Shown: positions 7,908 to 50,664 of the stretch, piece by piece
How the letters are laid out: each line of letters starts with the position of its first letter
Numbering within the stretch: the first letter of the stretch is position 1
Origin: Macrostomum lignano
Taxonomy: Eukaryota
NCBI GenBank assembly: GCA_002269645.1
Contig: NIVC01000650.1
Location: 186,001 to 250,000, forward strand
Length of the DNA stretch: 64,000 nucleotides
Direction: 5' to 3'
Notes under the pieces: generated by a model
The model's database searches: none
The model's input: only the letters and a program-made list of their open reading frames with translations
What the model was told of the DNA's origin: nothing
Position numbers and translations under genes: made by a program

Positions 7908-7981
7908 CCCACAAACCCAAGGACACGCGCTTCGCGCGTGTCCTTGGGTTTGTGGGTTTCGCGGAGCTCACTGGGAACTAG
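7908..7981 (+). other. Perfect 23-bp-stem hairpin followed by CTAG; candidate Helitron-type 3' terminus
   Basis: CCCACAAACCCAAGGACACGCGC-TTC-GCGCGTGTCCTTGGGTTTGTGGG at 7908-7956; CTAG at 7978-7981. The hairpin is certain, the element assignment is inference. Confidence 0.55.
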
Positions 7982-11791: not shown

Positions 11792-14700
11792 ATGGCCAAA
11801 TCAGAGCAAGCCAGTTTATTGCCTCCAAAGTTTAGCGTCGACTCCAACGTGAGAATGAGGCTAAGCACCTTTGAAGACTTCGTCGACGACTGCGAATGGG
11901 ACGAAAAGAAGAAGGCAAAGAAGCTGAGACTGCTGGTGACAGGAGAAGCGCAAATCTTCGTCTGGGAGCAGCCGGCAGACGTGTCAGCCAGCTATGAAAA
12001 GCTGAAGGAGAAGCTGATCGAGTGCTTCGGCAATAGTCTGAGCTGCTACAGAGCAAATGGAGGAGTTTGAAGGGCGAAAGTGAAGGCCCAACGAGTCGCT
12101 GAGGGAGCTCGCCTACAGCCTGAAGCTTCTCCACCTTCGGGCCCGCCCAGACGACTCCGTGGCGGCTCGGGAAAAGGATGTGAAGTTTCGCCTGATGCGC
12201 CTCCTGCCATCTGCCGAGAGAGATGCGCTGTTGAAGGACCAGGACGCGGACTCGTGTTCGCTGGCCGCCATCGTCAACAGAGCTGCAAGCTTGAGCTGGT
12301 GAGCCACGCAACTATAGCCTCATCAGCTGCGGTGTCGGTGGAAGACAGACGACTGAGCCAGCTGGAGCAGCAGATGCAGCAGCTGACAGCCAGCGTGCAA
12401 ACGGGACCACCCGGAAGAGACAGGCGTCAGAAGGGACCCATTAAGTGCTTCAGCTGTGGCAAGCCGGGTCACATCACTAGGCGGTGCCCAAAAAGCGATC
12501 GGCAGCCGCTGCAGCCGGTGCTCAGGCAAGAGTCACTCCGCCGCGGTGTGCCCGACACCAACTGGTCAGCCGCATGGAAACTTCTGAGGGTCGGCAGCCT
12601 GGGGCCAGCACCGACCCGCTCAAAAGGGGCCCTCAGATCAGCGCCTTCAGTCTTCGTGAAGGTGCACTTTGGCAGCGTGTCAGCGCCTGCTCTGCTCGAC
12701 ACCGGCGCGCAAGTTTCGTTTCATGGACAAGTCGCTGTTCGACAGATTGCCGTGCAAGATCAACTTCACCGATATCGGTGCGCTGCCGACGGCTGTCGAC
12801 AGATCCCGACTGCGCTGCCCTGGCCTGTCAGCAGCGGATGTTTCGATCGGCCAGACCATCCGCGTGCGCCATCGCTTCAAAGTCGTGGACGGCATCCAGC
12901 CCAGCCTGATCATCGGCATGGACTTCATCGGCGAGGTGTCGCGGGCGATGACCATCGACATTAAAGAAGGCTTCGTCAAGTTCGACAGCACAGCTGTGCC
13001 TTTTAGCAGCGAGCCGGCTCGGGCAGACTGTCGCCTGGTGCCGAGTGTCCTGGTGGCTACGGAGCTGCCCGCCCGCTGCGAGAAGCTGGTGTGGCTCAAG
13101 GTGGATTCCAGCGGCGAGCAGGGAGTCTTTGAGCCGGCTGAGAACTTCGTGAAGTCCACTGCCGTCCTGCCGGCCCGCGTGCTGGCGGTCTCGGACGACT
13201 GCCGCATCCCGGTGAAAATGTGCAACCTGGCAGAGGAGCCCGTGCTGCTGTACGCCAACAAGGCGGTCGGCACGTTCGAAGGCGCCATGACAGACGGGAC
13301 GGTCGCTAGGAGGAGACCTAGGAGACCCCGGTCGGTTGGAAGATAGGTTTCGGGATGTGCAACGCCCCGGCGACGTTCCAGCGGCTCATGGAGCTGGTGA
13401 TGTCCGGCCTGTACTGGGAGTCCGTGCTGACTTACATCGACGACATCATTGTGTTCAGCAGGACGTTCGACGGGCACTTGGAGAGGCTGGCGGAAGTTTT
13501 TAGCGGTTGCGAGACGCGGGACTCAAGCTGCACAAGGCCAAGAGCACGTTCGGCCATCGCCGGGTGCTGTACCTGGGACACCTGATCAGCGAGCAGGGCA
13601 TTGCACCGGATCCCGGCAAGGTTGAGGCCATTCGCAGCATGCCCAGCCCACCGACGACCGAGGAGGTGAAGCGGTTTCTCGAAATGCTGGGGTTCTACCG
13701 CTGGTTCATCCCAGGCTTCAGCCAGACGGCGAGGGTCCTGCACGACGTCAGCGTGAAATCGAGGGACTTCGCGTTGAGCAGCGACTGCGAGCGAGCGTTC
13801 CACGAGTTGAAGGACCGGCTGACGACGGCTCTGGTGCTGAGGCTGCCGTATTTCACCAAGCAGTTCGTGCTCATCTGCGACAGCAGTCAGTTCGCCGTCG
13901 GCGCGGTGCTCAGCCAGCTGCACGGAGACGCCAAGCTGCCTGTGGCGTTCGCCTCGCGCACCCTCAACAAGGCCGAGCGCAACTACTCGGCGACCGACCG
14001 CGAGCTGCTGGCGCTGGTCTGGAGTCTAAATCACTTCAGGACGTACCTGCTGAGTGTCCCGAGCTTCAGGGTCTACTCAGACCACCGGCCACTGCAAAGG
14101 TCTGCTGGCAACGAAGGACCCCGAAGGTCGGCTGGCGCGATGGCTTTCGACGCTGCAGCAGTTTTCGTTCAAACTGCTGTACCGGCCTGGCAGGGACAAC
14201 GTCGTGCCGGATGCGCTGAGCCGGGTGGCCGGCACGCGCCTGCAGCCTCGGTGGGACGACAGCAGCCTGCACGAGGAGCAACTGCAAGAGCCACTGCTAA
14301 GCAGGACGTTCCAGGCGCTGACCGAAGGGATTGACATCCTGTCCGATTCATGGGCGGCGCAGGACGAGGCCTTGGTGAGCTCGGCGGGTGTCCTGCTGGT
14401 GCGTGGCCAGCCAGTCATTCCCGGTCATCTGCGGCCATATTTCCTGCAGCAGGGGCACCCGTGCGACCAGAGCGGACACCTCGGCATCGACAGGACCGGA
14501 GCGAAGTTGTCTGAGCGCTGCTGGTGGCCTGGTCTGCGACGAGACGTTGAGAACTGGGTGGCCAGCTGCGCGGTCTGCCTGGCCAAGATGAGTCCAACCA
14601 AGCCGCAGAAGGCGCCGCTGCAGTCGACGTGCCAGCCGACGGCTCCGTGGCAGCTGGTGCAGATCGACATCAAAGGGCCGCTTCGGCGTACGATGAATGG

Positions 14701-15757
14701 CAAGGCGTACATCCTGAGCATGTGTGACGCCTTCTCCAAGTGGATGGAGACGGCAGCCCTGGCGGTGATCGACGCGGTGACGGTGGCGGATGCGCTGCTC
14801 AAGTCGGTGGTTCTGCATCACGGCGCTCCTCAGATGCTGCACTGCAGTGACCAGCTGCGACAATTCGAGAGCGAGGAGTTCGGCCGGCTCTGTGAGCAGC
14901 TGGGCGTCGAGAAGACGCGCACGTCGTCGTTTAATCCGAGCGGCAAAGGAATCGTCGAGCGAGGCAACCGGACGCTCGGCGACATGCTGGCGACGACGGT
15001 TGGCCAAGAACCAGCAGGACTGGGACAGCAAGCTGCTGTATGTGACCTGGGCCTACAGCACCTCCGTGCACAGCACCACCGGCCTCAGTCCGTACCAGGT
15101 CCTCCACGGCTGGCCACCGAGGCTGGCTCTCGACAGCTGGCTGATAAGCGGCGACCGGCCGGCAGCCGACGGTGGACATCACGGCTTCCTGCGGCGGACT
15201 CAGGAGAACCTGCAGAGCGCCTTCGACACGGTGCACAAGGCCGACTGCGGAGCGCCCAGGTCGAGCGCAACCGGCTGGCCAACCAGGACTCTCGGTTTGT
15301 GCCGTTCGAAGAGGGCCAGCTCGTGATGATGCGCAACTCCGTCATCAAACGCGGTCAGACGCAGTGTTTGAGCGCCAAGTGGAAGGGGCCGTACCGAGTC
15401 CTGAGGCGCCTGGGCGAGGTCAATTACCGCATCCAGGACGAGATCGGCCGCAGGCGCCGGCTGGTGGTGCACCACGACCGCCTCAAGCGCTTCGTGCAGC
15501 GGCGGGCGTCACTGGAGCTTCCGGCCGCAGCAGACCGCTGGCCGCTGGCCGCCGACTTCGACAACAACGGAACCGCCGCAGAGCCGCCCGGGCAGGCGGC
15601 CGATCCTAGCGGCGACGCAGTGACCTTCTGGCCCGAGCTGCAGGCAGACAAGGCACCCGAGGAGCCGCCGGCGGCACCGGCCGAGCCGGTCACGGTTCCG
15701 CGGCGGTCGGCAAGAGAGCGGCGGCCACCTGACTTGTACATGGCGGGATTTGCTTGA
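11792..15757 (+). pseudogene. Frameshifted gag-pol with N-terminal half of RT missing
   Basis: Gag MAKSEQ...; zinc knuckle CFSCGKPGHITRRC; protease LLDTGA; RT remnant GMCNAPATFQRLM...YIDD; RNase H CDSS...RELLA...SDH; integrase H-H-C-C zinc finger and IDIKGP...DAFSKW core; pieces lie in different frames. Confidence 0.92.
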
Positions 15758-20300: not shown

Positions 20301-20989
20301 CACCTCGGCTCGTACAGTCTCCGCGCGCTTGTATGTGCGCTGGAATGGGCAGAATGGCCTCAGTGCTGGTTTGAGCACTGCACGATGTCACCAAACGTTC
20401 TATGCGCCATGTAGAGTGCAAAATATTTACATATATAGGCGTATATACATATTTATCGTACGAAAACTTCCAGACCAATTTGCCGAAACAAATTATTGTT
20501 TGCTTAGAATCGACGCCAATCACAAGGGTCTTCAGTGCGAGAGCCAGACGCTTTTAACGATGAGTTGCTTTGCCCCCCCACTATCCAACATATGTGATTT
20601 AAAAACTTTTCCATCAGTTCTAGTCCCAAACTCATATGAAATTGATGGCTGCACGCAAGCAGAGATTAATTGCGCTGCCTCAATGACATGCCTCAAGCAG
20701 ATGCCGCCGCGGCGACAGGAAAATTTCAAATCGGCTGGAAAAATGTTGATAATATGTTTCATAGCTACATACGCTCGTACCACGGTGCGTATAAAGAGAA
20801 ATAAATGCAAAAAACGCGAAAAATGATAGACTGTTGTTTCAAAAGTTCTTTGCTTGCAGTTATGTTTCTGATGCATCGTTGATTAAACAATATATTTATG
20901 TTGTATTTTCCGCTTCCGTCCGTGTCGACCGATTATTGGGATTTCCCAGAGCTTGCCGGGTATAATAGGTGGGAGAGCGGCCACCCCTG

Positions 20990-21575
20990 AGGAGCTTACG
21001 GACACTTCAGGGCGGAAGTGGAGGGGCGCGGAGCTTACGGACACTTCAGGGCGGAAGTGGAGGGGCGCGGAGCTTACGGACACTTCAGGGCGGAAGTGGA
21101 GGGGCGCGGAGCGTACGGACACTTCATGGCGGAAGTGGAGGGGCGCGGAGCTTACGGACAATTCAGGGCGGAAGTGGAGGGGCGGGGAGCTTACGGACAC
21201 TTCAGGGCGGAAGTGGAGGGGCGCGGAGCTTACGGACACTTCAGGGCGGAAGTGGAGGGGCGCGGAGCTTACGGACACTTCAGGGCGGAAGTGGAGGGGC
21301 GCGGAGCTTACGGACACTTCAGGGCGGAAGTGGAGGGACGGGGAGCTTACGGACACTTCAGGGCGGAAGTGGAGGGGCGCGGAGCTTACGGACACTTCAG
21401 GGCGGAAGTGGAGGGGCGCGGAGCTTACGGACACTTCAGGGCGGAAGTGGAGGGACGGGGAGCTTACGGACACTTCAGGGCGGAAGTGGAGGGACGGGGA
21501 GCTTACGGACACTTCAGGGCGGAAGTGGAGGGGAGCAGAGCTTACGGACACTTCAGGGCGGAAGTGGAGGGGCGG
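20990..21575. repeat. 39-bp GC-rich minisatellite (GAGCTTACGGACACTTCAGGGCGGAAGTGGAGGGGCGCG)
   Basis: About 15 copies; 13-codon period explains four overlapping repeat ORFs. Confidence 0.97.
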
Positions 21576-21943
21576 GGAGCGTACGAACAGACGGACAGTC
21601 GCCCAGCCCTACGACAAGAAGGATCGGTTCGGATGAGGAGACTCAGCAGCACCAGAGAGGTGGACACGGGTCTGTAGAGGCGTACGGACACTTCACAGAC
21701 CCGAGCGAATCACTCAAAATAAGTAGTGGTAGAGAGAGCAGTGAGGGCGAAAGCCGGGCAAGGACCGCGCGCACACAAATACTGCATGAGTGGAGAGCAG
21801 GGGGCTAGGTGGGACTAAGCCACGCAGGGCTGGGGGTGCGGGGGGGGGGCAAAACTCACAGAGTTGAAGGGCGAGGGAGAAAGAAGGGGGAAGGCCAGCC
21901 AATCAGGTGCCTCCGCGGCGAGAGACATGATTGGACTAGCCCA

Positions 21944-21946
<3 letters not shown>

Positions 21947-22016
<70 letters not shown>

Positions 22017-22050
22017 GAGAGAGAGAGAGAGGGGGGGAGGGAGAGAGAGA
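21947..22050. repeat. (GA)n microsatellite
   Basis: Direct reading. Confidence 0.95.
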
Positions 22051-22522
22051 GGCGAAAAGACGCCAGCCAATAAAAATGAAAACGAGACAAATAAAGTGAA
22101 GAATGGCAGCTTAAGACGGAGGGGGGGAGATCAGAATGAACCAGCGATAGGGAGAGGAGAGGTGGAGAGCGCAGGGGTCAGTGCAAGGGCATTGAGGCGC
22201 AGCTCACAAAATTTATTCGGTAATCTGACTCGATTGCTTACATTCCTTGAATATGGACACCAGGACCTAAATAGCCTTTGCTTGCATCTAGACACAGTGT
22301 GACTAAGGTCTGCGTTCACCTGCATGGCGTTTGCGTATATTTCGTGCGATAAATAACGACAAGACTGTATGTCGAATGAATACAGCGAGTCAACTCGCTC
22401 GTAGCCATCAAGCATCCATGCCCGAACCACTCAGATGAAACCAGACCAGAAGAAATGGTCACTATTTCAACAAGCTTCTCGTAAATCTTCTCACAAACTT
22501 TAAACGGAAGATAACCTCCTGC

Positions 22523-23689
22523 TCATAATTCGCACACTCTGTCGGAGCCAGCAATTGGAGTCGTCGCAGCATCATAGGCATTTGGCATGTTACATGTAGC
22601 TGCTCTAGAAGATCCAGACTGCCAGTGCTTGAAATTCTCACCATCGCAGCAGCGACAGCAGCGTCCAGCTCGGGTCAGCATGGCTCGATAGTGACGTCGA
22701 AACTTCGTCGCAACTAGATAGGGCAGCCAATTCAGTGCGGGATTCAGATACATCACATGATTGAGCAGGACAGCTAGCCGGTGAGTAACCCGAGTACAGT
22801 CCACCGCGCCCAGGTGGTGCAGCAGCTTTAGAACGCAGTACGGCGCTTCACAGGCAATGAAGATCAGGCTGGTAAAGGCGAAGATCCGCGTCTGCGCGGA
22901 GGCTGCGGTAGCTGCCAGATGGCTGACGTTGCTGCTAACGCCAGGGCAAGACGTTAAGGAGCCGTTGAAATTCTGCTGGCTGCGTCTCAGACTGACCAGG
23001 ATAACGGCCAGGGACGTCAGGAGAGCCACGAACACCAGCAGGCGAGAGGCGAATACTGTGTACAGCCGGTACACTACTTCAATCCAGTCGTTTTGCCGGA
23101 ACAGACAGCGCGACTGTTGTCTGCTCCAGAAGGCGCTGGCCACCCGGACGCAGGGCAGGAGGCTGAGCAGTAGCAGCAGCGCCTGCCAGGCGACAATGTT
23201 CCGCCGACGCAGCAGACTGCGCTGCCGCATGGGCGCCAGAGTGACGACAAGCGAGTGCAGACAGAAGCCCAGGCGTAAGAAGGGGCTGCCGTGCAGCAGC
23301 CACAGGGTGGCCAGGTAGTAGGCCACGCACACCGGGAAGTTGGACTCGGTTCGGAAGATCGGCACGCCCAGAGTCAGTCCGAGGACGCTGGGCGCCAGGT
23401 AGTGCGTGACCGACTTTCCTCCTACCAGCAGGAGGTCCACGCAGCAGGTGGTGAGCATGCAGAGCCGCACGGAGAACGGGAAGCACTTCGGGTGCCGCAG
23501 CAGCACCAGCAGGCAGCTGGCGTTGCCCCAGACTCCCAGCGACATCAGCAGCGGGAAGAGCCACGAGAAGACGTGGACATGAAACTGACGATAGTCGAGC
23601 TGCCAGCTCGGTTTTTGCGTTGATGAGTTCCGAGAGACGTTGAAGCTCGGCAAATCGTCATCGAACCATTCGGGTTCGAGTTTCGACAT
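22523..23689 (-). CDS. Intronless divergent class A GPCR, 388 aa, resembling FMRFamide/myosuppressin/sex-peptide-receptor-like peptide receptors
   Basis: N-glycosylation sites NVS and NSS; seven hydrophobic segments; TM1 GN, TM2 D, Cys at top of TM3 and in ECL2, TM6 CEAP, TM7 NPALNWLPY, helix-8 FR. The DRY position reads HSL. Confidence 0.88.
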   Translation of the reverse strand: MSKLEPEWFDDDLPSFNVSRNSSTQKPSWQLDYRQFHVHVFSWLFPLLMSLGVWGNASCLLVLLRHPKCFPFSVRLCMLTTCCVDLLLVGGKSVTHYLAPSVLGLTLGVPIFRTESNFPVCVAYYLATLWLLHGSPFLRLGFCLHSLVVTLAPMRQRSLLRRRNIVAWQALLLLLSLLPCVRVASAFWSRQQSRCLFRQNDWIEVVYRLYTVFASRLLVFVALLTSLAVILVSLRRSQQNFNGSLTSCPGVSSNVSHLAATAASAQTRIFAFTSLIFIACEAPYCVLKLLHHLGAVDCTRVTHRLAVLLNHVMYLNPALNWLPYLVATKFRRHYRAMLTRAGRCCRCCDGENFKHWQSGSSRAATCNMPNAYDAATTPIAGSDRVCEL

Positions 23690-25088: not shown

Positions 25089-26951
25089 ATGGTTGGCGCA
25101 TCACTTGCTTCTAGTGATAAGCAGAAAACTGACTGGAAAATCTGGACTTCGTTCAAAAGCAACCCAAACATTATGCAGCTGAAACGGCACTGGCGAGTCC
25201 TGCCGCTGCTGCTGGCGCCGGTGCTGCTGTCGCCACTGCTGACGATGGGCTCCGAGAAGGCCCGCTGCGCCTACCTACTGCTGCTGATGGCCACCTACTG
25301 GGTGCTTGAGCTGCTGCCGCTGAGCCTCACCGCCGTGCTGCCCTTCTTCCTCGGTCCGCTGCTGCGCATCGGCACCTGTCATGAGCTCGCCAAGTCCTAC
25401 TTCACCGACATCCACTTCCTCATGATTGGCGGCGTCATGCTGTCCGTGGCCATGGAGGACACAGGACTCAGCCGTCGGTTCGCCCTTCGAACTGTGGCGC
25501 TGCTGGGAACGCGGCCGCGCTGGCTGCTGCTCGGCTTCATGCTGCCCTCCTGGCTCATGTCCATGTGGATGAGCAACACCGGCACCACCATCCTCATGTT
25601 CCCCTTCGTGATGGCGGCAATCGCCGAGACAGAGAAGGCTACCGAGCAGCTGCAGGACGCCCCTGATCGAGAGTCGCTCGCGCTCGACCAGCGAGAAAAG
25701 CACCCTACAGCGACTGACTGCGAAGGCGCCGCTGCAGAGCCTCCGCGGCCGTGCGAGGACGGCCTGGACTCCAACACTGTCGGCAAGACGCGTCACAAAA
25801 CACACACTCGAAGCCACGCAGTCTGCTACTGTCTCTCCGTGGCCTACGCCTGCAACGTAGGCGGAGTGGCCACTCTGATCGGCACCGGAACCAACCTCGT
25901 GCTCGTTGGACAACTCCAGCAGATCTACCGCGTCTCCAATGTGGTCACCTTCTCCAACTGGATGGCCTTCAGCTTGCCGTTGTCGCTGTTCAGCCTGTTG
26001 CTCATCTGGTTGCTGCTCCAGCTTGTTTTTGTTGGTCCGCGTGACACCTTTAACTGGCGCTCGCAGTCGGCCGAACAGAAGCGACAGGAGGCTCGGGTGA
26101 AGCTCTACTTCCACCAGCAGCTGGAGGCTCTCGGGTCAGTTTCGTTCGCCGAGTGGGCCACCATGGCCGCTTTTCCTTGCGTGCTGCTGCTCCTGCTGAC
26201 AGGCAAGCTGACCTCCAGCTTCGGCTGGCACTACCTGTTCGGCTCCGTCAACGACAAGCCGGTCGTGTCCGACGCCACCGGAATGCTGCTGGTCGCTTTG
26301 CTGCTCACTCTGATCCCCAACCCCGACCTGACCGAGGAGCACGGACCGACCAACAGTCTGGGATATCGAGCCGTCGCTCGGTGGGATCGAGTCCTGCTCA
26401 AGATCCCGCTCGACATCATGCTGCTCATCGGAGGAGGCCTCGCTCTAGCCAAGCTCACTAAGGACACCAAGCTGTCAGAGACCATCGGGTCCGCCCTAAC
26501 TCCCACACTGCAGGCGCTGCCCACCGAGCTGACGCTGCTGCTGCTCAGCTTCTGCGTCATCTGGCTCACGGAAGTCACCTCCAACATGGCCACCGCCTCC
26601 GTCCTGCTGCCCATAGTAGCCCAGATCGCCGCCTGTCTCGGACACAATCCGCTGCTGTTCATGGTCTCGCTCACCGTCACCTGCTCGTTCGCGTTCTGCC
26701 TACCGACCGCCACACCGCCAAATGCCATCGTGTTCGGCAGCGGCCGGGTCAGCATTCCCAGCATGGCCAAGGCCGGGCTCGTGCTCAATCTGGTTTTCTC
26801 GGTTTTTATTCCTCTGTACGCTTTGTTAGTCGGTCGTTGGGTATACAGCGTGCACGAATTGCCCAAGTGGGCGGAGTCTTCGTCGACTTCCTGCTCCGGC
26901 AGCAATCAAACGTCGAGTAACTACATGAACTCTACAAAGCTGGCTGGTTAG
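25089..26951 (+). CDS. SLC13: SLC13 Na+/dicarboxylate-citrate cotransporter (NaDC/NaCT/Indy-like), copy A, 620 aa
   Basis: Motifs SMWMSNTGT, AYACNVGGVATLIGT, TEVTSNMAT and LPTATPPNAIVF; TATA-like AATATAAA near 24989. Alternative ATG at 25173. Confidence 0.95.
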   Translation: MVGASLASSDKQKTDWKIWTSFKSNPNIMQLKRHWRVLPLLLAPVLLSPLLTMGSEKARCAYLLLLMATYWVLELLPLSLTAVLPFFLGPLLRIGTCHELAKSYFTDIHFLMIGGVMLSVAMEDTGLSRRFALRTVALLGTRPRWLLLGFMLPSWLMSMWMSNTGTTILMFPFVMAAIAETEKATEQLQDAPDRESLALDQREKHPTATDCEGAAAEPPRPCEDGLDSNTVGKTRHKTHTRSHAVCYCLSVAYACNVGGVATLIGTGTNLVLVGQLQQIYRVSNVVTFSNWMAFSLPLSLFSLLLIWLLLQLVFVGPRDTFNWRSQSAEQKRQEARVKLYFHQQLEALGSVSFAEWATMAAFPCVLLLLLTGKLTSSFGWHYLFGSVNDKPVVSDATGMLLVALLLTLIPNPDLTEEHGPTNSLGYRAVARWDRVLLKIPLDIMLLIGGGLALAKLTKDTKLSETIGSALTPTLQALPTELTLLLLSFCVIWLTEVTSNMATASVLLPIVAQIAACLGHNPLLFMVSLTVTCSFAFCLPTATPPNAIVFGSGRVSIPSMAKAGLVLNLVFSVFIPLYALLVGRWVYSVHELPKWAESSSTSCSGSNQTSSNYMNSTKLAG

Positions 26952-27339
26952 TACGCCGTATTATTGAGTTTAGGGCTTCGTAGCTCAAACTTTAAACTCG
27001 AATTTCTTTAATTTGCAGCTTAAAGCGGTTAGATAAATTTCTATTATCTTAAAGTATACTGATTTTGCCAGAGTAGTTTTTTCCGTCTGGCTATTTGTCA
27101 CACAGCTAAGTTGCTTGAAGCAGGTGTGACTTAGAAGTCCTATAAGTAACTTCTATTTATCTTTAGTTTTTACTAAATGAAAAGCAAAACTACAAAAAAG
27201 TACGAATAATATTCCTTTTAAAAAATCATTTGTGCCTGACACAGACTAAAGCATAGACCGCCAGAAATAACTGTTCTATCCAATAGTTTCTCTGCATTAG
27301 TCGGCAATAAAGTAGGATGTATGGGGTACTCAAAATTGA

Positions 27340-27672
27340 GTAATAATAATTTTTTTAATAATTGATTCCACCTGCCCTAATGGGCAGCTTTGTGCAACCG
27401 ACAGCTCAGCCGCAGCTATTGCGCTGCGCATCTGAAGACTGCGTACATAGCTGTTCAGTCCAAGGACTGTTGGGTGTCGCCACACACCCTTAATTATCTT
27501 AGCTAATGCTGGTACCCATTCTTCAGCTGAGTGAACTGAAGCAATGAAAAGTTTTGCAAAGTCAATGCAAAGTGTCTTGTTGAAGGACACAAACTGTTTC
27601 GAGTGGTTCGAGAATCAAACCGGCCTTTGAGTCCTGAGTCCGAAGCTCTTCTAACGACTAAGCCACAACCCC
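27340..27672 (-). mobile_element. tRNA-derived SINE with conserved central domain and (ATT)n tail
   Basis: Minus strand: A-box TGGCTTAGTCG, B-box GGTTTGATTC, then GTGTCCTTCAACAAGACACTT and CACTCAGCTGAAGAATGGGTACC (resembling conserved SINE body domains), ending ATTATTATTAC. Confidence 0.7.
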
Positions 27673-27769
27673 TACTGAGACTGAACATTTAATTACAGGG
27701 TTCTTAATGGCCTACATGTACATGTACATGCATGGGATGTCTTGGCGTGCGAATCTTCAAAGTCTCAGG

Positions 27770-28766
27770 TGTCAGGGATAAACTCCCAAGACCGGTGCCG
27801 GCGTAGAGCAATAGGACACGAGTAGACGAGGCGACAACACAAGGAATGACTGGCTGTCAATTAGCAGAGGCAGGGGCTCTCTTTCACAGGGACCTAAATC
27901 CGTGGTGTATTGCGTATCAGAACTACACTGCGAGATACGCATCGTTCAGTCTTTCGAGCTTATCAAAACCGTAGTCGATCGATAATGCAACACAAAAACA
28001 TTTTGTTTAAATGAGCTAGGCGGATGAAGATACATTTATGCGCTAGCCTATTTTTGTATCCTCAGAAAATACCATCGTTTAAAATATAGTTTAGTTGTCT
28101 TTTTTCCTTCATCCCTTTTGTCGTCACGAGGCGTAAGACCTTTATAGCCGTTGTAGTATCGTGACTCGCACATTCTCCTCCGTCGTGCTATACGAGCGTA
28201 TTTGTTGCCGCTAGCTAGTTCCCGGCCGCAAAGTACGAACGTCTTTCTCTTGGCTTGATACTTTCGGGCTTTTGTTGTGTTCTGCTGGTTGATATTGTGC
28301 GTTGGCATTGCTTGTCCTTTCGCATGCCCTACGATGTCGACCTGTGTTCGTCTCGTTGATAATTTGCTACGTGTTGCATTTGATTGTTTTTGTACTTTTC
28401 TGTTTCTCTCCCAGGTGTATTTTGTTATTGATTGTTGACTTCTTTCCGGAAGGTCTTATCGGAATTTCTCACAGAGAAAGACTATCTGTTTGCTCGCCTT
28501 TCTGTGCATTATCTTCTGTTTGAGAGCCAGTCTGACTTTGCTAAGACATATCTTGCCGCAGCCTTCACAGTCACACTAATATCTTAGTCTATTCTCGTCG
28601 TCTCTTGGAGTTAACCATCTTGTCTCTCCTTTCATTTGTGAGTTGTATTTGTTGTAGTTGTTATTTGTTGCTGCGGTCGTCCTCATCGTTGTCGTCGTTG
28701 TTGTTGCTCGTCCACTGTATCTACTTGTAGCTGAACACTAAACTGATCTCACTACTTGCCGTGTCA
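27770..28766 (-). mobile_element. Candidate solo LTR, about 1 kb, between the SLC13 copies
   Basis: Minus strand TGACACGG...CCCTGACA (one change from TGTCA...TGACA) with internal CTATAAAG; no matching TSD. Confidence 0.35.
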
Positions 28767-29229
28767 TGGACGTTTTCACGTTGCAAGGATGCCGTCAAAC
28801 AACAATGACATTTTCGGTCCTATGAAAATCGACTGCCGCAATTTAACTGCCGGCTACATTTGACCTCTGGAATTTTGCTGCTAATTTAGCCCTAGCCCCA
28901 AACCTTTTCAACATTAAACCGAACTGAACTATAACTCTAATCTGAACCCTAATTCCAAACTTTAACCAATGAACACAAGTTTCTGTATCTTCTAAAGAAA
29001 AGTTATTTTAGAGCCGCAGAATTCTATACTGTAGCTATAGTATATGAAACAATAACAAATACTGACAAGGTACATAGGTAAAGGCATGATGCTCTATATA
29101 TCTGTTTAAGTGCATAATTAAAGATGATGGCGTGTATAAATCAGTGCAAACTCGTATCTTGCTGAAACATTGGAACAGTAAAGATATCTACTTGCTATGC
29201 AGCAACCAACAATAATAAAAGATTAAAGA

Positions 29230-31002
29230 TTATCCCGAAAACGTCTCGTTGGCACACAAGCTCGACGAGGTCTCAGCCCACTCAGGGAGTTCGTGTACGT
29301 TGTACACCCAACGACCCACTAGCATCGTGTAGAACGGCACAATAGTTGAGAAAACCAGATTGAGCACGAGCCCGGCCTTGGCCATGCTGGGAATGCTGAC
29401 CCGGCCGCTGCCGAACACGATGGCATTTGGCGGTGTGGCGGTCGGTAGGCAGAACGCGAACGAGCAGGTGACGGTGAGCGAGACCATGAACAGCAGCGGA
29501 TTGTGTCCGAGACAGGCGGCGATCTGGGCTACTATGGGCAGCAGGACGGAGGCGGTGGCCATGTTGGAGGTGACTTCCGTGAGCCAGATGACGCAGAAGC
29601 TGAGCAGCAGCAGCGTCAGCTCGGTGGGCAGCGCCTGCAGTGTGGGAGTTAGGGCGGACCCGATGGTCTCTGACAGCTTGGTGTCCTTAGTGAGCTTGGC
29701 TAGAGCGAGGCCTCCTCCGATGAGCAGCATGATGTCGAGCGGGATCTTGAGCAGGACTCGATCCCACCGAGCGACGGCTCGATATCCCAGACTGTTGGTC
29801 GGTCCGTGCTCCTCGGTCAGGTCGGGGTTGGGGATCAGAGTGAGCAGCAAAGCGACCAGCAGCATTCCGGTGGCGTCGGACACGACCGGCTTGTCGTTGA
29901 CGGAGCCGAACAGGTAGTGCCAGCCGAAGCTGGAGGTCAGCTTGCCTGTCAGCAGGAGCAGCAGCACGCAAGGAAAAGCGGCCATGGTGGCCCACTCGGC
30001 GAACGAAACTGACCCGAGAGCCTCCAGCTGCTGGTGGAAGTAGAGCTTCACCCGAGCCTCCTGTCGCTTCTGTTCGGCCGACTGCGAGCGCCAGTTAAAG
30101 GTGTCACGCGGACCAACAAAAACAAGCTGGAGCAGCAACCAGATGAGCAACAGGCTGAACAGCGACAACGGCAAGCTGAAGGCCATCCAGTTGGAGAAGG
30201 TGACCACATTGGAGACGCGGTAGATCTGCTGGAGTTGTCCAACGAGCACGAGGTTGGTTCCGGTGCCGATCAGAGTGGCCACTCCGCCTACGTTGCAGGC
30301 GTAGGCCACGGAGAGACAGTAGCAGACTGCGTGGCTTCGAGTGTGTGTTTTGTGACGCGTCTTGCCGACAGTGTTGGAGTCCAGGCCGTCCTCGCACGGC
30401 CGCGGAGGCTCTGCAGCGGCGCCTTCGCAGTCAGTCGCTGTAGGGTGCTTTTCTCGCTGGTCGAGCGCGAGCGACTCTCGATCAGGGGCGTCCTGCAGCT
30501 GCTCGGTAGCCTTCTCTGTCTCGGCGATTGCCGCCATCACGAAGGGGAACATGAGGATGGTGGTGCCGGTGTTGCTCATCCACATGGACATGAGCCAGGA
30601 GGGCAGCATGAAGCCGAGCAGCAGCCAGCGCGGCCGCGTTCCCAGCAGCGCCACAGTTCGAAGGGCGAACCGACGGCTGAGTCCTGTGTCCTCCATGGCC
30701 ACGGACAGCATGACGCCGCCAATCATGAGGAAGTGGATGTCGGTGAAGTAGGACTTGGCGAGCTCATGACAGGTGCCGATGCGCAGCAGCGGACCGAGGA
30801 AGAAGGGCAGCACGGCGGTGAGGCTCAGCGGCAGCAGCTCAAGCACCCAGTAGGTGGCCATCAGCAGCAGTAGGTAGGCGCAGCGGGCCTTCTCGGAGCC
30901 TATCGTCAGCAGTGGCGACAGCAGCACCGGCGCCAGCAGCAGCGGCAGGACTCGCCAGTGCCGTTTGATGGGCTCAGGCAGTTTTCTGCATGCAAAAGCC
31001 AT
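29230..31002 (-). CDS. SLC13: SLC13 cotransporter, copy B, about 590 aa; the true start may be ATG 31082 with intron 31047-30986
   Basis: Same motifs as copy A; the core is essentially identical to copy A in inverted orientation, with its own N- and C-termini. Confidence 0.95.
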   Translation of the reverse strand: MAFACRKLPEPIKRHWRVLPLLLAPVLLSPLLTIGSEKARCAYLLLLMATYWVLELLPLSLTAVLPFFLGPLLRIGTCHELAKSYFTDIHFLMIGGVMLSVAMEDTGLSRRFALRTVALLGTRPRWLLLGFMLPSWLMSMWMSNTGTTILMFPFVMAAIAETEKATEQLQDAPDRESLALDQREKHPTATDCEGAAAEPPRPCEDGLDSNTVGKTRHKTHTRSHAVCYCLSVAYACNVGGVATLIGTGTNLVLVGQLQQIYRVSNVVTFSNWMAFSLPLSLFSLLLIWLLLQLVFVGPRDTFNWRSQSAEQKRQEARVKLYFHQQLEALGSVSFAEWATMAAFPCVLLLLLTGKLTSSFGWHYLFGSVNDKPVVSDATGMLLVALLLTLIPNPDLTEEHGPTNSLGYRAVARWDRVLLKIPLDIMLLIGGGLALAKLTKDTKLSETIGSALTPTLQALPTELTLLLLSFCVIWLTEVTSNMATASVLLPIVAQIAACLGHNPLLFMVSLTVTCSFAFCLPTATPPNAIVFGSGRVSIPSMAKAGLVLNLVFSTIVPFYTMLVGRWVYNVHELPEWAETSSSLCANETFSG

Positions 31003-39701: not shown

Positions 39702-41994
39702 ATGTCTGACCAGGCCTACCTAGGCAGTCGGATTAGCCTAGTCTCCAAGGCCGGCATTCGCTACGAGGGTGTCTTATCCTCAATTGACACCAACGAGAGC
39801 ACAGTAACGCTGACTAAAGTCCGCTCGTTTGGCACCGAGAACCGGGCATCGGAGCGCAGCATACCGCCTAGCAACGATGTGTTCGAGTCCATAGTGTTCC
39901 GCGGTAGCGATATCAGCGATTTGCACGTGTGCGAGCCGCCCCAGGCTGAGCAGGAGGAGCAGCAGCCTGATCAATATACTGATCCAGCCATTGTGAGCAT
40001 GCAGCAGGCGGCTCCTGCTGGGCCGCCGCCACCTCCGCCCTTGGACCCTGTCATTTCTGCTGCTGTTTCGCCTGGCATGGTAAGTCAAAATATTCTCTTA
40101 GGGTGAGACTTCGGGTCTGATTTCGGGGTCTAGGGGTGAGATTTTGGGTTTACGGGAGAGATTTCAGAGTCTAGGGGTGAGATTTCGGGGTCTAGTGGTC
40201 AGATTTTGGGTCTAGGGTTGAGATTTTTGGGGTCTAGGGTGAGATTTCGGGTCTGGTACAGTCTAATGGGGAGATTTCAGGTATCTTATTGTCTTAGTAA
40301 GAGGTTTCCAGTTTTGTATAGTCTAGGTGTGAGATTTCCAGTTTAGTGTAGTCTAGGGGTGAGATTTCCAGTTTAACATAGTCTAGGGGGTGAGATTTCC
40401 AGTTTAATATAGTCTAGGGGTGAGATTTCGCGTGATTGAATTCTAGGGGGTAAGATTTCGCGTGATTGAATTCTAGGGGGTAAGATTTCGCGTGATTTAA
40501 TTCTAGGGGGTGAGATTTCGCGTGATTGAATTCTAGGGGGTAAGATTTCGCGTGATTTAATTCTAGGGGGTAAGATTTCGCGTGATTGAATTCTAGGGGG
40601 TGAGATTTCGCGTGATTGAATTCTAGGGGGTGAGATTTCGCGTGATTGAATTCTAGGGGGTAAGATTTCGCGTGATTGAATTCTAGGGGGTGAGATTTCG
40701 CGTGATTGAATTCTAGGGGGTGAGATTTCGCGTGATTGAATTCTAGGGGGTAAGATTTCGTGTCTCGTGAGAGTTTTTTATCGTATCAGCAGTTGCTAAC
40801 GTTATTATTTTACTGTTTTTCTCCAGCCGCAGCACCTCATGAGCGGGCCGCCCATTGTGCCGCCACAGCAGCAGCCGCAGCAGCAGATGCGCCTTCCGCC
40901 ACGCCAGCAGCAGCAGCAGCAGCAGGGACCCCCAGTTCCGCTGAACGACTGCCCGCCAAACCGGTTCGATGTTGACTACGATTTCGATTCGGCTAATGCT
41001 GTCCTCGAACAGGAGCTGCGACTCCTGGACGTGTCCTCTGACTCCGGCAAGCCGGCAGATGACCAGCAGCAGCAGCAGCCTGCTGCCGCCGCCGTTGCTT
41101 CCGCCTTGGATCCTGACGAACTGAAAAAAACCGACGAACCAACTGGGAGCGGCGGAGACGGCGGGACCGGACCTGATGCCGAACTTGCGCCAGCGTACGA
41201 CAAGGTGAATTAAATCATATCGATAATATATAAATCCTCCTCGCTACATATGTATAGCGCTTGGCAGTCAGTTTCAGATTATCAATCAGCTGGTTTAGCA
41301 CTTCGGCTAGCTTATAACAATTATTAAAATTCGAGAAACCATGATCCAACTGAAAAGATCCCAGAAATCATGATCCCGCTGAAGATATCTCAGAAATCAT
41401 GACCCCACTGAAGATATCTCAGAAATCATGACCCCACTGAAGATATCTCAGAAATCATGATCCCACTTAAAGTATCCCAGAAATCATGATCCCACTTAAA
41501 GTATCCCAGAAATCATGATCCCACTGAAAAAATCCCAGAAATCATGATCCCACTTGAAAATCTCACAAATCATCATCCCACAGAAAAAATCCTTCTTCGA
41601 CACCATTGGCGCTGGCGGCCCCGGCGGCCCGAGCGGCGGCCTCAGCGGCCGGCAACAGCGGCGACGCATTGACGTCGAGACTTTCGGCTCCGTCGCTGGC
41701 GGCGGTGGCGGCGGCTATCGCGGCGGCCAGCAGCAGCAACGCGGCGGCAACCGTGGTTACTATGGCAACAACAATAGCTACAATAATAGCTACGGTAACA
41801 ACAACTATAGGCAGCGGGGTTATAATTATAATCAGGGCGGCGGCTACGGTGGTCATCGAGGCGGCTGGGGCGGCCGCGGTGGAGGCTGGGGCGGCGGCGA
41901 TGGAGGCTGGGGCGGCGGCGGAGGAGGCTGGGGCGGCGGCGGCGGCGGCGGCTGGAGGTCCTTCAGCGGTCCAGATAGCGACAACTGGCGTTAA
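39702..41994 (+). CDS. LSM14: LSM14 (RAP55/Trailer hitch/CAR-1/Scd6) mRNA granule protein, 388 aa; exons 39702-40079, 40827-41204, 41584-41994
   Basis: LSm domain [20 protein letters not shown]; FDF-type motif [11 protein letters not shown]; FFD box YDK|KKSFFDTI; TFG box IDVETFG; RGG tail. Both introns are GT-AG in phase 0. Confidence 0.96.
40100..40760. repeat. 30-bp minisatellite in LSM14 intron 1 (AGATTTCGCGTGATTGAATTCTAGGGGGT(A/G))
   Basis: Degenerate at the 5' side, homogeneous from about 40420. Confidence 0.95.
41330..41575. repeat. 29-bp minisatellite in LSM14 intron 2 (CAGAAATCATGATCCCACTGAAGATATCT)
   Basis: About 8 copies ending at the acceptor. Confidence 0.92.
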
Positions 41995-42694: not shown

Positions 42695-43700
42695 GAATCG
42701 CCCCAAAATACCCCATAAGAGAGAGAACCGCCCCAAAATACCCCATAGAGAATCACCCCAAAATACCCCATAGAAATAGAATTGCTTCAAAAATATCCCA
42801 TAGAGAATCGCCCCTAAATACCCCATAGAAAGACGATCGCCCCAAAATTATCCTTACAGAATCGCCCAAAAATACCCCATAAAGAGATACCGCCCCAAAA
42901 TACCCCATAGCGATAGAATTGCCCAAAAATTGCCCAAGAATGGGCAATGGACTCCAAATGGACTCCATAGAGAATCGTCTCAAAATACCCCATAAAGAAT
43001 CGCCCCAAAATACTCCACAGAGTAAGAGAATCGACCCAAAATACCCCAATGCAAGAGAGAATTGCCTCAAAAAACCCCATAGAGAGACAATCGGCCCAAA
43101 ATACCCCATAGAGTAAGAGAATCGCCCTAAAATACCAAATTGAGTAAGAGAATCGCCCTAAAATACCCTATAGAGTAAGAGAATCGCCCCAAAATACCCC
43201 ATAGAGTAAGAGAATCGCCCTAAAATACCCCATAGAGTAAGAGAATCGCCCTAAAATACCAAATTGAGTAAGAGAATCGCCCTAAAATACCCTATAGAGT
43301 AAGAGAATCGCCCCAAAATACCCCATAGCGATAGAATCGCCCCAAAATACCCCATAAGAGAGAGAACCGCCCCAAAATACCCCATAGAGAATCACCCCAA
43401 AATACCCCATAGAAATAGAATTGCTTCAAAAATATCCCATAGAGAATCGCCCCAAAATACCCCATATAGTAAGAGAATCGCCCCAAAATACCCAAAATAG
43501 TAAGATAATCGCCCCAAAATACCCCATATAGTAAGATAATCGCCCCAAAATACCCCATATACTAAGATAATCGCCCCAAAATACCCCATATAGTAAGAGA
43601 ATCGCCCCAAAATACCCCAATGCGAGAGAGAATCGCCCCAAAATACCCCATAGAGAGACAATCGCCCCAAAATACCCCATAGCGAGACAATCGCTCCAAG
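42695..43700. repeat. 28-31-bp minisatellite (GAGAATCGCCCCAAAATACCCCATAGAGTAA-like) between LSM14 and the DMAC2-like gene
   Basis: More than 30 variant copies; explains the YGVFWGD/WGILGR ORFs. Confidence 0.95.
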
Positions 43701-43728
43701 CACAACCTTAACTTTGCAGTTGCACTCC

Positions 43729-46700: not shown

Positions 46701-47806
46701 GTTCCTGAAGTACTCGCTAGTTCCTGAAGTACTCGCTAGTTCCTGAAGTATTCCCTAGTTCCTGAAGTACTCGCTAGTTCCTGAAGTATTCCCTAGTTCC
46801 TGAAGTATTCCCTAGTTCCTGAAGTATTCCCTAGTTCCTGAAGTATTCCCTAGTTCCTGAAGTATTCCCTAGTTCCTGAAGTATTCCCTAGTTCCTGAAG
46901 TATTTTCTAGTTCCTGAAGTACTCGCTAGTTCCTGAAGTATTCCCTAGTTCCTGAAGTACTCGCTAGTTCCTGAAGTATTCCCTAGTTCCTGAATTATTC
47001 TCTAGTTCCTAAAGTATTCCCTAGTTCCTGAAGTACTCGCTAGTTCCTGAAGTATTCCCTAGTTCCTGAAGTATTCCCTAGTTCCTGAAGCATTCCCTAG
47101 TTCCTGAAGTATTCCCTAGTTCCTGAAGTATTCCCTAGTTCCTGAACTATAGTTCCTGAAGTATTCCCTAGTTCCTGAACTATTCCCTAGTTCCTGAACT
47201 ATTCCCTAGTTCCTGAACTATTCCCTAGTTCCTGAACTATTCCCTAGTTCCTGAAGTATTCCCTAGTTCCTGAAGTATTCCCTAGTTCCTGAACTATAGT
47301 TCCTGAAGTATTCCGTAGTTCCTGAACTATTCCCTAGTTCCTGAACTATTCCCAAGCTCCTGAAGTATTCCTGAATTACTGAGTCGCTGTAACAAATTAC
47401 TCTGGCTGCACCTGGAATCGAGCCTGGGCCGCTGGCACATCATAGCGCCGCGCCAGACCGCTAGGCTGCGGCCCCCGCAAGCAGCTGTTGCTCACTGATC
47501 ATTATTAAATCAGCTTCACCCCCAACCCGGCAACCCCAGCTGCTGGAGATATCCGACTGCCCCGGCATCACCTGGGAGGGCGTCGCCAGCCTGTGGCGTT
47601 TGAAAAATCTTCGCCGATTGGTCCTGTCAGAGAATTGCCACCTGCTGTCCCAGCCCGAGGGCCTGGCCCTGGTGCCGACCCAGCTGGAGTCCCTCGTGCC
47701 CGGCCTGTTCGTTGAAGGTGTCGACGACTTATTAGCGCTGTCGGTTCCGCGTGCCGCCCCAGAAGCCGACTCAGAGAGCGTCTACAGCGCCGAATTGGCG
47801 CCGTGA
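43729..47806 (+). CDS. DMAC2: Mitochondrial DMAC2/ATP5SL (factor B-like, LRR-type) protein, 300 aa; exons 43729-44158, 46126-46331, 47540-47806
   Basis: Arg-rich presequence MLLSVLRRVASRRCYSS; FGVEVAAADRLVRLGCRVAF; IEAIDARD; LRLRRCPFVDD; LEISDCPGIT..GV..L..LKNLRRL. Splice phases 1 and 0 match. DMAC2 versus ATP5S/DMAC2L is not fully resolved. Confidence 0.82.
44270..46070. repeat. Compound 12/24-bp minisatellite in intron 1 (GGTCAGGTAGGGAGTCAGACAGAT), with an inverted block at 44586-44790
   Basis: Direct reading; the block reads CTACCTGACCATCTGTCTGACTCC. Confidence 0.95.
46420..47370. repeat. 19-bp minisatellite in intron 2 (TTCCTGAAGTATTCCCTAG)
   Basis: About 48 copies. Confidence 0.96.
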
Positions 47807-48219
47807 CCTTTATTGACCTCTAGTGTCCTTAGATGACCCTACTGTAACCTTGGGCTGCCATTGGCTTTTGATTATTGCAAAAATACAATTTTTTATTCTG
47901 TTTTGCCTGATATCATTGTTTAAAAATTCACTTAACTGTTTACTTACAGTAGTAGCACTTTGCTTGTTTGCGCGTATAAAATTACATATTGACGAAAACC
48001 CGTCTATGAATTTTTTCAAGCATTTTTGGAATTTCGTCAACTGATGAAAACAAATGCAAATTTGCAAATTCTAACAGTTTTTTAACATAAGCAAATGACA
48101 GACGGCTGTGCTTTGCTTTTGGCTTCAAAGCTTTTCTGTTTGCTAGGCCCCGAGGACATTTAAATCAGTATCAGAGGTCAAACTGGCGCTTACTGAAGGA
48201 TCTGGAGTAGAAATTTCTG

Positions 48220-50225: not shown

Positions 50226-50233
50226 TATCTATC

Positions 50234-50328
<95 letters not shown>

Positions 50329-50333
50329 TTATC

Positions 50334-50384
<51 letters not shown>

Positions 50385-50424
50385 TTATCTATCTCTCTAT
50401 CTATCTATCTAGCTATCTATCTAT

Positions 50425-50487
<63 letters not shown>

Positions 50488-50500
50488 GCTATCTATCTAT

Positions 50501-50548
<48 letters not shown>

Positions 50549-50549
50549 A

Positions 50550-50592
<43 letters not shown>

Positions 50593-50597
50593 TTATC

Positions 50598-50664
<67 letters not shown>

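What the first reader, a model, noticed from the sequence alone, without database searches (positions are those of the whole stretch)
25182..30966. Old inverted SLC13 paralogs homogenised over a sharply bounded 1,619-bp tract
25182-26800 is the reverse complement of 29348-30966. I see one difference (ATG vs ATA, LTMG/LTIG), and the alternative-frame ORFs of both copies are also identical. Right after CTGGTTTTCTC the copies stay alignable but differ at many synonymous and amino-acid sites (VFIPLYALLVGRWVYSVHELPKW vs TIVPFYTMLVGRWVYNVHELPEW), and the 5' ends are unrelated. This is the pattern of an ancient duplicate under recent gene conversion across a 2.5-kb-spacer palindrome: identical transport cores with private termini and promoters. 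The converted tract looks more GC3-rich than the tails, compatible with GC-biased conversion. The arms could also invert the spacer.
Basis: partly seen in the sequence, partly recalled or inferred. Interest (0 to 1): 0.72.

Follow-up and report, generated by a model that had tools for sequence, protein, structure and literature searches.

The report
Flatworm transporter gene pair homogenised by conversion
Two old, tail-to-tail copies of an SLC13 (sodium/dicarboxylate-sulfate type) transporter gene in the flatworm Macrostomum lignano have had almost their whole coding sequence recently overwritten one by the other, a clean but ordinary example of gene conversion between inverted duplicates.

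Summary
Window 25182-26800 is the reverse complement of 29348-30966, with one mismatch (25247/30901). Beyond 26800 the copies stay alignable in frame (61/86 nt, then fading near the stop codons). Upstream of 25182 they are unrelated.

The window is Macrostomum lignano assembly Mlig_3_7, scaffold NIVC01000650.1. The two arms are convergent, intronless, full-length SLC13 genes.

A second scaffold (NIVC01004268.1, a homeologous copy) carries the same palindrome with the same block boundaries. There the arms differ at 28 core sites. Four-sequence site patterns:
- Core: 10 sites group the two window copies against the two homeolog copies, and none group orthologs.
- 3' tail: 33 sites group orthologs, and none group the arms.
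- Tail dS between copies is about 1.1-1.4. Homeolog dS is 0.03-0.07. Window-arm dS is 0.

So this is an old duplicate pair with a conversion after the subgenome split, most probably copy 2 into copy 1.

GC3 is higher in the core (0.82 against 0.50-0.69), but polarised recent substitutions run 12 GC>AT to 1 AT>GC, which gives no support for GC-biased conversion. The spacer is collinear in both loci, so no inversion is seen. An assembly or polishing artefact is unlikely but cannot be excluded without reads. This is a known kind of event (Drosophila Amy and Hsp70 palindromes) and of modest interest.

The parts
25173..26951 (+). SLC13 copy 1 coding sequence. The probable start is ATG 25173 (592 aa). 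The longest ORF starts at 25089 (620 aa), but that ATG is GTG in the homeolog. No introns.
   Evidence: ORF listing. Pfam PF00939 Na_sulph_symp, E=1.8e-57. Best solved-structure match is human SLC13A2/NaDC1, E=2.7e-98, aligned over residues 38-601. Start-codon conservation.
29230..31002 (-). SLC13 copy 2 coding sequence (590 aa), convergent with copy 1. An annotated protein on scaffold NIVC01000650.1.
   Evidence: ORF listing. Pfam PF00939, E=1.5e-57. Exact product on record in GCA_002269645.1.
25182..26800 (+). Left arm of the homogenised block (1,619 nt): copy 1 from codon 4 (counted from ATG 25173) to the middle of the last transmembrane helix. Probably the recipient of the latest conversion.
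   Evidence: One mismatch to the right arm. At 24 sites where homeolog copy 1 is unique, this arm carries the copy-2 state.
29348..30966 (-). Right arm of the homogenised block (copy 2). Probably the donor.
   Evidence: Copy 2 differs from its homeolog ortholog at 15 core sites; copy 1 differs from its ortholog at 34.
25247..25247 (+). The only arm-to-arm difference. Copy 1 has G (ATG, Met). Copy 2 at 30901 gives ATA (Ile), and the A is unique to window copy 2.
   Evidence: site pattern G G A G.
26801..26903 (+). Unconverted but homologous 3' coding tail of copy 1 (rest of the last helix plus the C-terminus, which carries the NQT/NST sequons). It is orthologous to the homeolog copy-1 tail, not to the copy-2 tail.
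   Evidence: Codon alignment. dS 1.1-1.4 and dN about 0.3 between copies, against 1 difference in 105 nt to its ortholog. 33 of 36 variable sites group orthologs. Sequons.
29245..29347 (-). Unconverted homologous 3' coding tail of copy 2 (C-terminus with the NET sequon).
26952..29229 (.). AT-rich unique spacer between the two stop codons (41% GC), holding the two 3' UTRs. No internal palindromy. Collinear with the homeolog spacer, which is about 590 nt longer.

Best explanation
The locus is an old inverted (tail-to-tail) duplication of an intronless SLC13/DASS anion transporter gene in Macrostomum lignano, and its coding cores evolve in concert by intrachromosomal arm-to-arm gene conversion. 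The convertible block has fixed edges. The 5' edge is at 25181/25182, just inside the coding sequence. The 3' edge is at 26800-26801, inside the last transmembrane helix. Beyond these edges the copies are too diverged to pair (71% identity, then none), so heteroduplex cannot extend and the boundary sustains itself. The same edges occur in the homeologous locus, so the block is older than the subgenome split. After that split the window's locus had a conversion covering at least 25320-26648 and at most the whole block. Copy 2 (minus strand) most probably served as template for repair of copy 1. [quoted passage not shown] The result is two genes with the same transport core, different C-terminal helix ends and glycosylated tails, and different flanking regulatory DNA. 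Shown here: the structure, the phylogenetic incongruence between core and tail, and the relative ages. Inferred: the donor direction, the repair pathway, and why the boundary sits where it does.
For: Arms are identical except for 1 of 1,619 nt. The homeologous scaffold NIVC01004268.1 has the same convergent gene pair and the same block edges, but 28 arm differences. Site patterns in the core: W1W2|H1H2 10, W1H1|W2H2 0, H1-unique 24, H2-unique 4, W2-unique 1. In the 3' tail: W1H1|W2H2 33, none for the alternative. Core dS: W1-W2 0, W2-H2 0.031, W1-H1 0.069, H1-H2 0.056. Tail dS between copies is 1.1-1.4, against 0-0.04 between orthologs. The window copy-1 core is closer to homeolog copy 2 (14 differences) than to its own ortholog (34), while its tail is 1/105 from its ortholog and 33/105 from copy 2. 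If the window arms had the homeolog's level of divergence, the chance of 1 or fewer differences is 2e-11. Non-coding divergence between the two loci is 3.5-5.6% in the flanks, of the order of published subgenome SNP divergence of 1.9-2.4% (PMC10733133). Both genes are under purifying selection: core dN/dS is about 0.03-0.08 and tail dN/dS about 0.25.
Against: The assembly was built from noisy PacBio reads with Canu and polished with Pilon using short DNA and RNA-seq reads (PMC5730564). Either step could in principle flatten small differences between arms, and I could not look at reads. The donor direction rests on parsimony with only two loci and no outgroup. An unusually fast homeolog copy 1 would give the same pattern (24 against 4 unique sites, binomial p=0.0002 against equal rates). 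No population data or second species were available.
Confidence: 0.8

Rival explanations
1. Assembly or polishing artefact. The real arms in this locus differ by about 1-2%, as in the homeolog. Read correction across the palindrome, or short-read/RNA-seq polishing, then collapsed them to one sequence wherever reads could cross-map, which would also produce sharp edges where similarity drops to 71%.
For: Mlig_3_7 was assembled with Canu 1.4 and polished with Pilon using Illumina and RNA-seq reads. Later authors say the assembly contains errors in copy representation. The identical block coincides with the part of the arms where reads could cross-map.
Against: The same pipeline left 28 arm differences in the homeologous palindrome. 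A read mixture should give a mosaic of copy-1 and copy-2 states, but the window arms carry the copy-2 state at 24 sites and a possible copy-1 state at 4 at most. One true arm difference survives at 25247. The palindrome is 5.8 kb with no gaps, which is short enough to be spanned by long reads. Even if this were true, the older conversion would still stand, because the homeolog arms are 98.3% identical against 67-71% in the tail.
Confidence: 0.1
2. A recent inverted duplication of a 1.6-kb gene segment rather than conversion between old paralogs. On this view the identical block is simply young.
For: The 5' edge passes abruptly from identity to unrelated sequence, as at a duplication breakpoint.
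Against: The 3' edge passes into in-frame homologous sequence with dS about 1.2. Each tail type has its own ortholog in the homeolog. The homeolog has the same two genes and the same edges, so the pair predates the subgenome split while the identity postdates it. Pasting a young segment into an old paralog is gene conversion by another name.
Confidence: 0.02
3. No conversion: extreme constraint on the core, including synonymous sites (codon bias, GC3 0.82), keeps old paralogs identical.
For: The core has high GC3 and very low dN.
Against: The same synonymous sites differ freely between the homeologous loci (dS 0.03-0.07, with 13-28 synonymous differences), and yet not one differs between the window arms.
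Confidence: 0.01
4. The conversion is real, but the history differs from the one proposed. Either copy 1 was the donor and homeolog copy 1 later evolved fast, or there were several partial conversions in both loci rather than one long tract.
For: Arm differences in the homeolog are denser in the 5' 1,020 nt (24) than in the 3' 599 nt (4), which hints at a partial, more recent tract there. There is no outgroup.
Against: That heterogeneity is not significant after permutation (p=0.19). Equal-rate expectations fit copy 2 as donor (10 against 4 post-split changes, p=0.18) and reject a star tree (24 against 4, p=0.0002).
Confidence: 0.07

Closest known systems
Drosophila Amy-p/Amy-d palindromic amylase genes (concerted evolution confined to the coding region)
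   Same: Both are linked inverted duplicates whose coding sequences are more alike within a genome than orthologs are between genomes, while the flanks evolve independently. Ectopic gene conversion is inferred (review PMC3924832).
   Different: This is a different gene family and phylum. Here the comparison is between homeologous subgenomes of one neopolyploid genome rather than between species. The tract also stops inside the coding sequence, leaving about 35-50 C-terminal codons unconverted.
Drosophila Hsp70Aa/Hsp70Ab inverted pair
   Same: Both are palindromic gene pairs in which a break in one paralog can be repaired from the other, giving rapid concerted evolution (PMC3924832).
   Different: The Hsp70 pairs are divergent or convergent heat-shock genes backed by population evidence of shared polymorphisms. 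No polymorphism data exist here.
Arm-to-arm gene conversion in sex-chromosome palindromes of primates (from my own knowledge: Rozen et al. 2003 and later X-palindrome work)
   Same: Both have inverted arms around a unique spacer that are kept near-identical by intrachromosomal conversion.
   Different: Those arms are tens of kb to Mb long and include non-coding DNA. Here the arm is 1.6 kb, it is almost exactly a coding sequence, and it is autosomal or unassigned.
SLC13/DASS transporters (human NaDC1/SLC13A2, NaDC3, NaCT, NaS1, Drosophila INDY, bacterial VcINDY)
   Same: Full-length alignment to NaDC1 (E=2.7e-98). Both hairpin-tip Ser-Asn motifs are present, and the C-terminal tail carries N-glycosylation sequons.
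   Different: Only about 34% identical to the nearest database relatives, which are ticks and Ciona. The gene is intronless, the second motif reads SNM instead of SNV, and the substrate (di/tricarboxylate or sulfate) is unknown.

Membership tests
Concerted evolution by non-allelic (arm-to-arm) gene conversion | Within the tract, paralogs in one genome or locus are more similar to each other than each is to its ortholog or homeolog. | tested here: met
   Core differences are W1-W2 1, W1-H1 34 and W2-H2 15. Ten informative sites support W1W2|H1H2 and none support the orthology split.
Concerted evolution by non-allelic (arm-to-arm) gene conversion | Homologous sequence adjoining the tract shows the much older true divergence and the orthology tree. 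| tested here: met
   3' tail: 33 sites W1H1|W2H2 and 0 for the alternative, dS 1.1-1.4 between copies. Tail similarity z=26 against shuffles.
Concerted evolution by non-allelic (arm-to-arm) gene conversion | The identity is not explained by constraint on the sequence. | tested here: met
   Synonymous sites in the same core differ between loci (dS 0.031-0.069) but not between the window arms (0 of 428 synonymous sites).
Concerted evolution by non-allelic (arm-to-arm) gene conversion | The identity is real in the DNA (reads) and polymorphisms are shared between paralogs in populations. | not testable with these tools
   No read or population data were available. The assembly method (Canu plus Pilon) leaves a small risk of artefact.
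GC-biased gene conversion | GC content at silent sites is higher in the tract than in unconverted homologous sequence. | tested here: met
   GC3 is 0.82 in the core against 0.62-0.69 in the 3' tails and about 0.5 in the 5' ends. However, a neighbouring single-copy ORF has GC3 of 0.73, and the tails are only 12-50 codons long.
GC-biased gene conversion | Excess of AT>GC over GC>AT among changes fixed in the tract. | tested here: not met
   Polarised post-split changes are 12 GC>AT and 1 AT>GC. The inferred copy 2 to copy 1 overwrite changed 12 sites AT>GC and 8 GC>AT, which is not significant.
Inverted-repeat-mediated inversion of the spacer | Alternative spacer orientations, or swapped pairing of 5' end and 3' tail, between copies of the locus. 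| tested here: not met
   The window and homeolog loci are collinear throughout. In both, the copy-1 5' end goes with the VFIPLY tail and the copy-2 5' end with the TIVPFY tail. Only two loci were compared.
SLC13 / DASS sodium-coupled anion transporters | Na_sulph_symp domain over the full length. | tested here: met
   PF00939, E=1.8e-57, profile positions 14-470 of 472. Aligned to human SLC13A2 residues 28-591.
SLC13 / DASS sodium-coupled anion transporters | Two hairpin-tip Ser-Asn-Thr/Val motifs that bind sodium and substrate (feature recalled from the VcINDY/NaCT literature). | tested here: met
   WMSNTGTT aligns with WISNTATS, and TEVTSNMATAS aligns with TECTSNVATTT, in the NaDC1 alignment. 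The second motif has Met in place of Val.
SLC13 / DASS sodium-coupled anion transporters | Transport activity and substrate class. | not testable with these tools
   Scores against NaDC1, NaDC3, NaCT and NaS1 are close (E from 1e-98 to 1e-83), so no assignment is made.

The most novel reading that the evidence does not exclude
The block edges are identical in two subgenomes, and the 3' edge sits in the middle of a conserved transmembrane helix. One reading is that selection actively keeps conversion out of the last 35-50 codons, because the two genes have diverged in function through their C-terminal helix end and glycosylated tail (for example in sorting or partner binding). On that reading, the difference between subgenomes (one homogenised, one not) would show that arm-to-arm conversion is reshaping duplicated genes differently in the young polyploid subgenomes of M. 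lignano.
Probability: 0.15. Interest if true: 0.45.

Novelty: new member of a known kind. Interest (0 to 1): 0.3.

Why it matters
The locus is a compact, well-controlled example of concerted evolution. The same genome supplies both the converted locus and an unconverted homeologous control, so the event can be dated relative to the recent genome duplication of M. lignano. The papers read here on that genome do not discuss gene conversion: PMC10733133 contains no occurrence of the term. There are two practical consequences. Short reads and RNA-seq cannot tell the two genes apart except through the last 100-150 coding nt and the UTRs. Divergence-based dating of such duplicates in this species will also be misleading. 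It does not reveal a new mechanism.

Tried and rejected
- **Closer relatives of the transporter.** The large protein search found only the two M. lignano loci above 34% identity, so no sister-species test was possible.
- **A third subgenome copy.** The 90% cluster has two members only. The 620-aa product and the neighbouring 388-aa ORF are not on record. The other annotated neighbour lies too far away for a 10-kb flank to reach both arms, so I ran no further search on it.
- **Residual homology in the 5' flanks and the spacer halves.** None was found at 1 kb (z=1.9 and 0.4). There is a weak 13-15-nt match (GCAGAAAACTG) in the 100 nt upstream of the tract (z=4.1), in different frames, which I regard as marginal.
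- **A partial-tract signal in the homeolog.** The maximum chi-square test was not significant (p=0.19).
- **RNA genes and tRNAs in the window.** None were found.
- **Literature on the gene id Mlig006849.** Nothing was found.
- **A missed-adapter fold-back read as the source of the palindrome.** Rejected, because the arms are separated by 2.3 kb of unique sequence, have diverged tails, and the structure recurs on a second scaffold.
Full report
**What is in the sequence**

The repeat finder returns a single long inverted repeat in the region: arms 25182-26886 and 29262-30966, with 2375 nt between them. A base-by-base comparison shows three zones.
- From 25182 to 26800 there is one mismatch in 1,619 nt. 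At 25247 the left arm has G and the right arm gives A, i.e. ATG/ATA, Met/Ile.
- From 26801 to 26886 there are 25 mismatches in 86 nt.
- Further in, and anywhere outward of 25182, mismatches occur at the random rate.

The 86-nt similarity is highly significant (z=26 against shuffles). The 1-kb outer flanks and the two halves of the spacer are not significantly similar (z=1.9 and 0.4). The window has no N runs.

**What the arms are**

The arms are two convergent open reading frames:
- copy 1 on the plus strand, 25089 or 25173 to 26951;
- copy 2 on the minus strand, 31002 to 29230.

Both match Pfam Na_sulph_symp over the whole profile (E about 1e-57). Both align end to end with the solved human SLC13 transporters, best with NaDC1/SLC13A2 (E=2.7e-98), and both Ser-Asn hairpin motifs are present. 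The genes are uninterrupted, although this species averages about five introns per gene (PMC5730564). The 3' edge of the identical block falls inside the last hydrophobic helix (…GLVLNLVFS | VFIPLYALLVGRWVY…). The only N-glycosylation sequons of each protein lie in the private C-terminal tails.

**Where the window comes from**

The exact 590-aa product is recorded once, on NIVC01000650.1 (405 kb) of assembly GCA_002269645.1. That assembly is Macrostomum lignano Mlig_3_7. The surroundings fit a repeat-rich animal genome: a Ty3/gypsy-type element, a Tc1/mariner element and many minisatellites. The nearest relatives of the protein outside this genome are only about 34% identical.

**The decisive comparison**

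The 90% protein cluster has one more member, PAA47993.1, on a second scaffold, NIVC01004268.1. That scaffold (locus L002) carries the same arrangement. It has a 590-aa copy-2-type gene and a 620-aa-frame copy-1-type gene, convergent, with 2927 nt between the arms. The two loci are collinear over more than 12 kb. Their flanks differ by 3.5-5.6% in aligned non-coding DNA. That is of the order of the 1.9-2.4% SNP divergence published for the three subgenomes of this neopolyploid, highly inbred line (PMC10733133). I therefore treat the second scaffold as a homeolog. W denotes the window and H the homeolog.

Aligning the four coding sequences and classifying the variable sites gives:

| Region | W1W2 \| H1H2 | W1H1 \| W2H2 | H1-unique | H2-unique | W2-unique |
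|---|---|---|---|---|---|
| Core | 10 | 0 | 24 | 4 | 1 |
| 3' tail | 0 | 33 | 1 | 0 | 2 |

In the 32 alignment columns just 5' of the block, 18 sites support W1H1|W2H2. Core and tails therefore have incompatible histories, which is the signature of gene conversion.

Nei-Gojobori estimates give the time order.

| Comparison | dS |
|---|---|
| Tail, copy 1 against copy 2 | 1.1-1.4 (dN about 0.3) |
| Core, W1-H1 | 0.069 |
| Core, W2-H2 | 0.031 |
| Core, H1-H2 | 0.056 |
| Core, W1-W2 | 0 (0 of 428 synonymous sites) |

The duplication is thus some 20-40 times older than the subgenome split. The arms had already been homogenised before or around that split. The window's locus was homogenised again very recently. 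If the window arms had the homeolog's divergence, seeing 1 or fewer differences has probability 2e-11.

**Direction and extent**

The window's copy-1 core is 14 differences from homeolog copy 2 but 34 from its own ortholog. Its tail is 1/105 from its ortholog and 33/105 from copy 2. At all 24 sites where homeolog copy 1 stands alone, window copy 1 carries the copy-2 state.

Under a rough clock, the simplest history is that copy 2 templated the repair of copy 1. Post-split changes are then 10 (W2 lineage) against 4 (H2 lineage), p=0.18. The alternative star tree needs 24 against 4, p=0.0002. The diagnostic sites show that the tract covers at least 25320-26648; at most it fills the whole block.

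The block edges are the same in both loci (25181/25182, and 26800-26801/26802), so the edges predate the split. My inference is that once the tails fell to about 70% identity, heteroduplex could no longer pass, and the edge became self-sustaining. Selection for different tails is possible but has not been shown: tail dN/dS is about 0.25, which indicates purifying selection.

**Side claims**

- GC3 is indeed higher in the core (0.82) than in the 3' tails (0.62-0.69) or the 5' ends (about 0.5), with Fisher p between 0.0002 and 0.07.
- Direct evidence does not favour GC-biased conversion. Changes that can be polarised since the split are 12 GC>AT to 1 AT>GC. The inferred overwrite changed 12 sites AT>GC and 8 GC>AT. 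A neighbouring unduplicated ORF already has GC3 of 0.73. GC-biased conversion stays 'compatible, unsupported'.
- The spacer has the same orientation in both loci, and each 5' end is paired with the same tail type. No inversion is seen in this sample of two.
- Copy 1 has almost no 'private N-terminus'. Its upstream ATG (25089) is GTG in the homeolog, and the conserved ATG is 25173, three codons before the block.

**Artefact risk**

Mlig_3_7 was assembled with Canu from early PacBio reads and polished with Pilon using Illumina and RNA-seq reads. Cross-arm read correction or ambiguous short-read mapping could erase small differences. Four points argue against this:
- the same pipeline preserved 28 differences in the homeologous palindrome;
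- the window arms are not a mosaic of copy-1 and copy-2 states (24 against at most 4);
- one difference survives at 25247;
- the 5.8-kb structure contains no gaps.

I put this rival at about 10%. Even then the older conversion stands, since the homeolog arms are 98.3% identical against about 70% in the tail.

**Comparison with what is known**

Linked palindromic gene pairs whose coding regions evolve in concert while the flanks diverge are classic: Drosophila Amy-p/Amy-d and Hsp70Aa/Ab (review PMC3924832). From my own knowledge, arm-to-arm conversion in primate sex-chromosome palindromes is a further case. This locus works in the same way. It is new only in its gene family, its organism, and the convenient internal control that a young polyploid provides.

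**Verdict**

The main interpretation is supported. GC bias and inversion are not supported. This is a new member of a known kind, of modest interest.

Noticed in passing
window 12080-15757 (+): GC-rich (about 63%) Ty3/gypsy-type LTR retroelement coding region with zinc knuckle, RT-RNase H and integrase domains, split over several frames or ORFs.
   Followed up: partly
window 50778-52437: Tc1/mariner element. The transposase ORF 50946-52022 has Sleeping-Beauty-type HTH domains and is flanked by 216-nt inverted repeats (50778-50993 / 52222-52437, 99% complementary).
   Followed up: partly
window 1-3490, 20870-21700, 40300-40820, 43000-50800, 54700-56920, 62820-64000: More than a dozen long minisatellite arrays (units of 8-39 nt, tens to about 100 copies each). 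Several create spurious long ORFs.
   Followed up: no
window 22523-23689 (-); L002 17748-18662: A 388-aa multi-pass membrane-like ORF with no Pfam match lies 1.4 kb upstream of copy 1. It is intact here but truncated to 304 aa in the homeologous scaffold, and it is not among the called genes of the record.
   Followed up: partly
window 25089 and 25173; L002 14604-16466: The upstream ATG of the 620-aa ORF is GTG in the homeolog. The conserved start is 25173, which gives a 592-aa protein. Copy-1-type proteins are not on record in the protein collection (look-up of the window's 620-aa product; only two 590-aa cluster members).
   Followed up: yes
window 25089-26951 and 29230-31002: Both SLC13 genes are intronless in a genome that averages about five introns per gene. 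This suggests that the ancestor of the pair may have been a retrocopy.
   Followed up: no
window 27700-27910 versus L002 (reverse-complement coordinates 7909-8727): The homeolog spacer carries about 590 nt more than the window spacer, in four blocks. The nature of the extra sequence was not examined.
   Followed up: no
window 21809-22099: A GA-rich microsatellite produces mirror-image RERERE/SLSLSL pseudo-ORFs on both strands.
   Followed up: no
window about 39702-41002 and beyond (+): The record has a called gene with a 388-residue product here, apparently with several exons. It was not examined.
   Followed up: no
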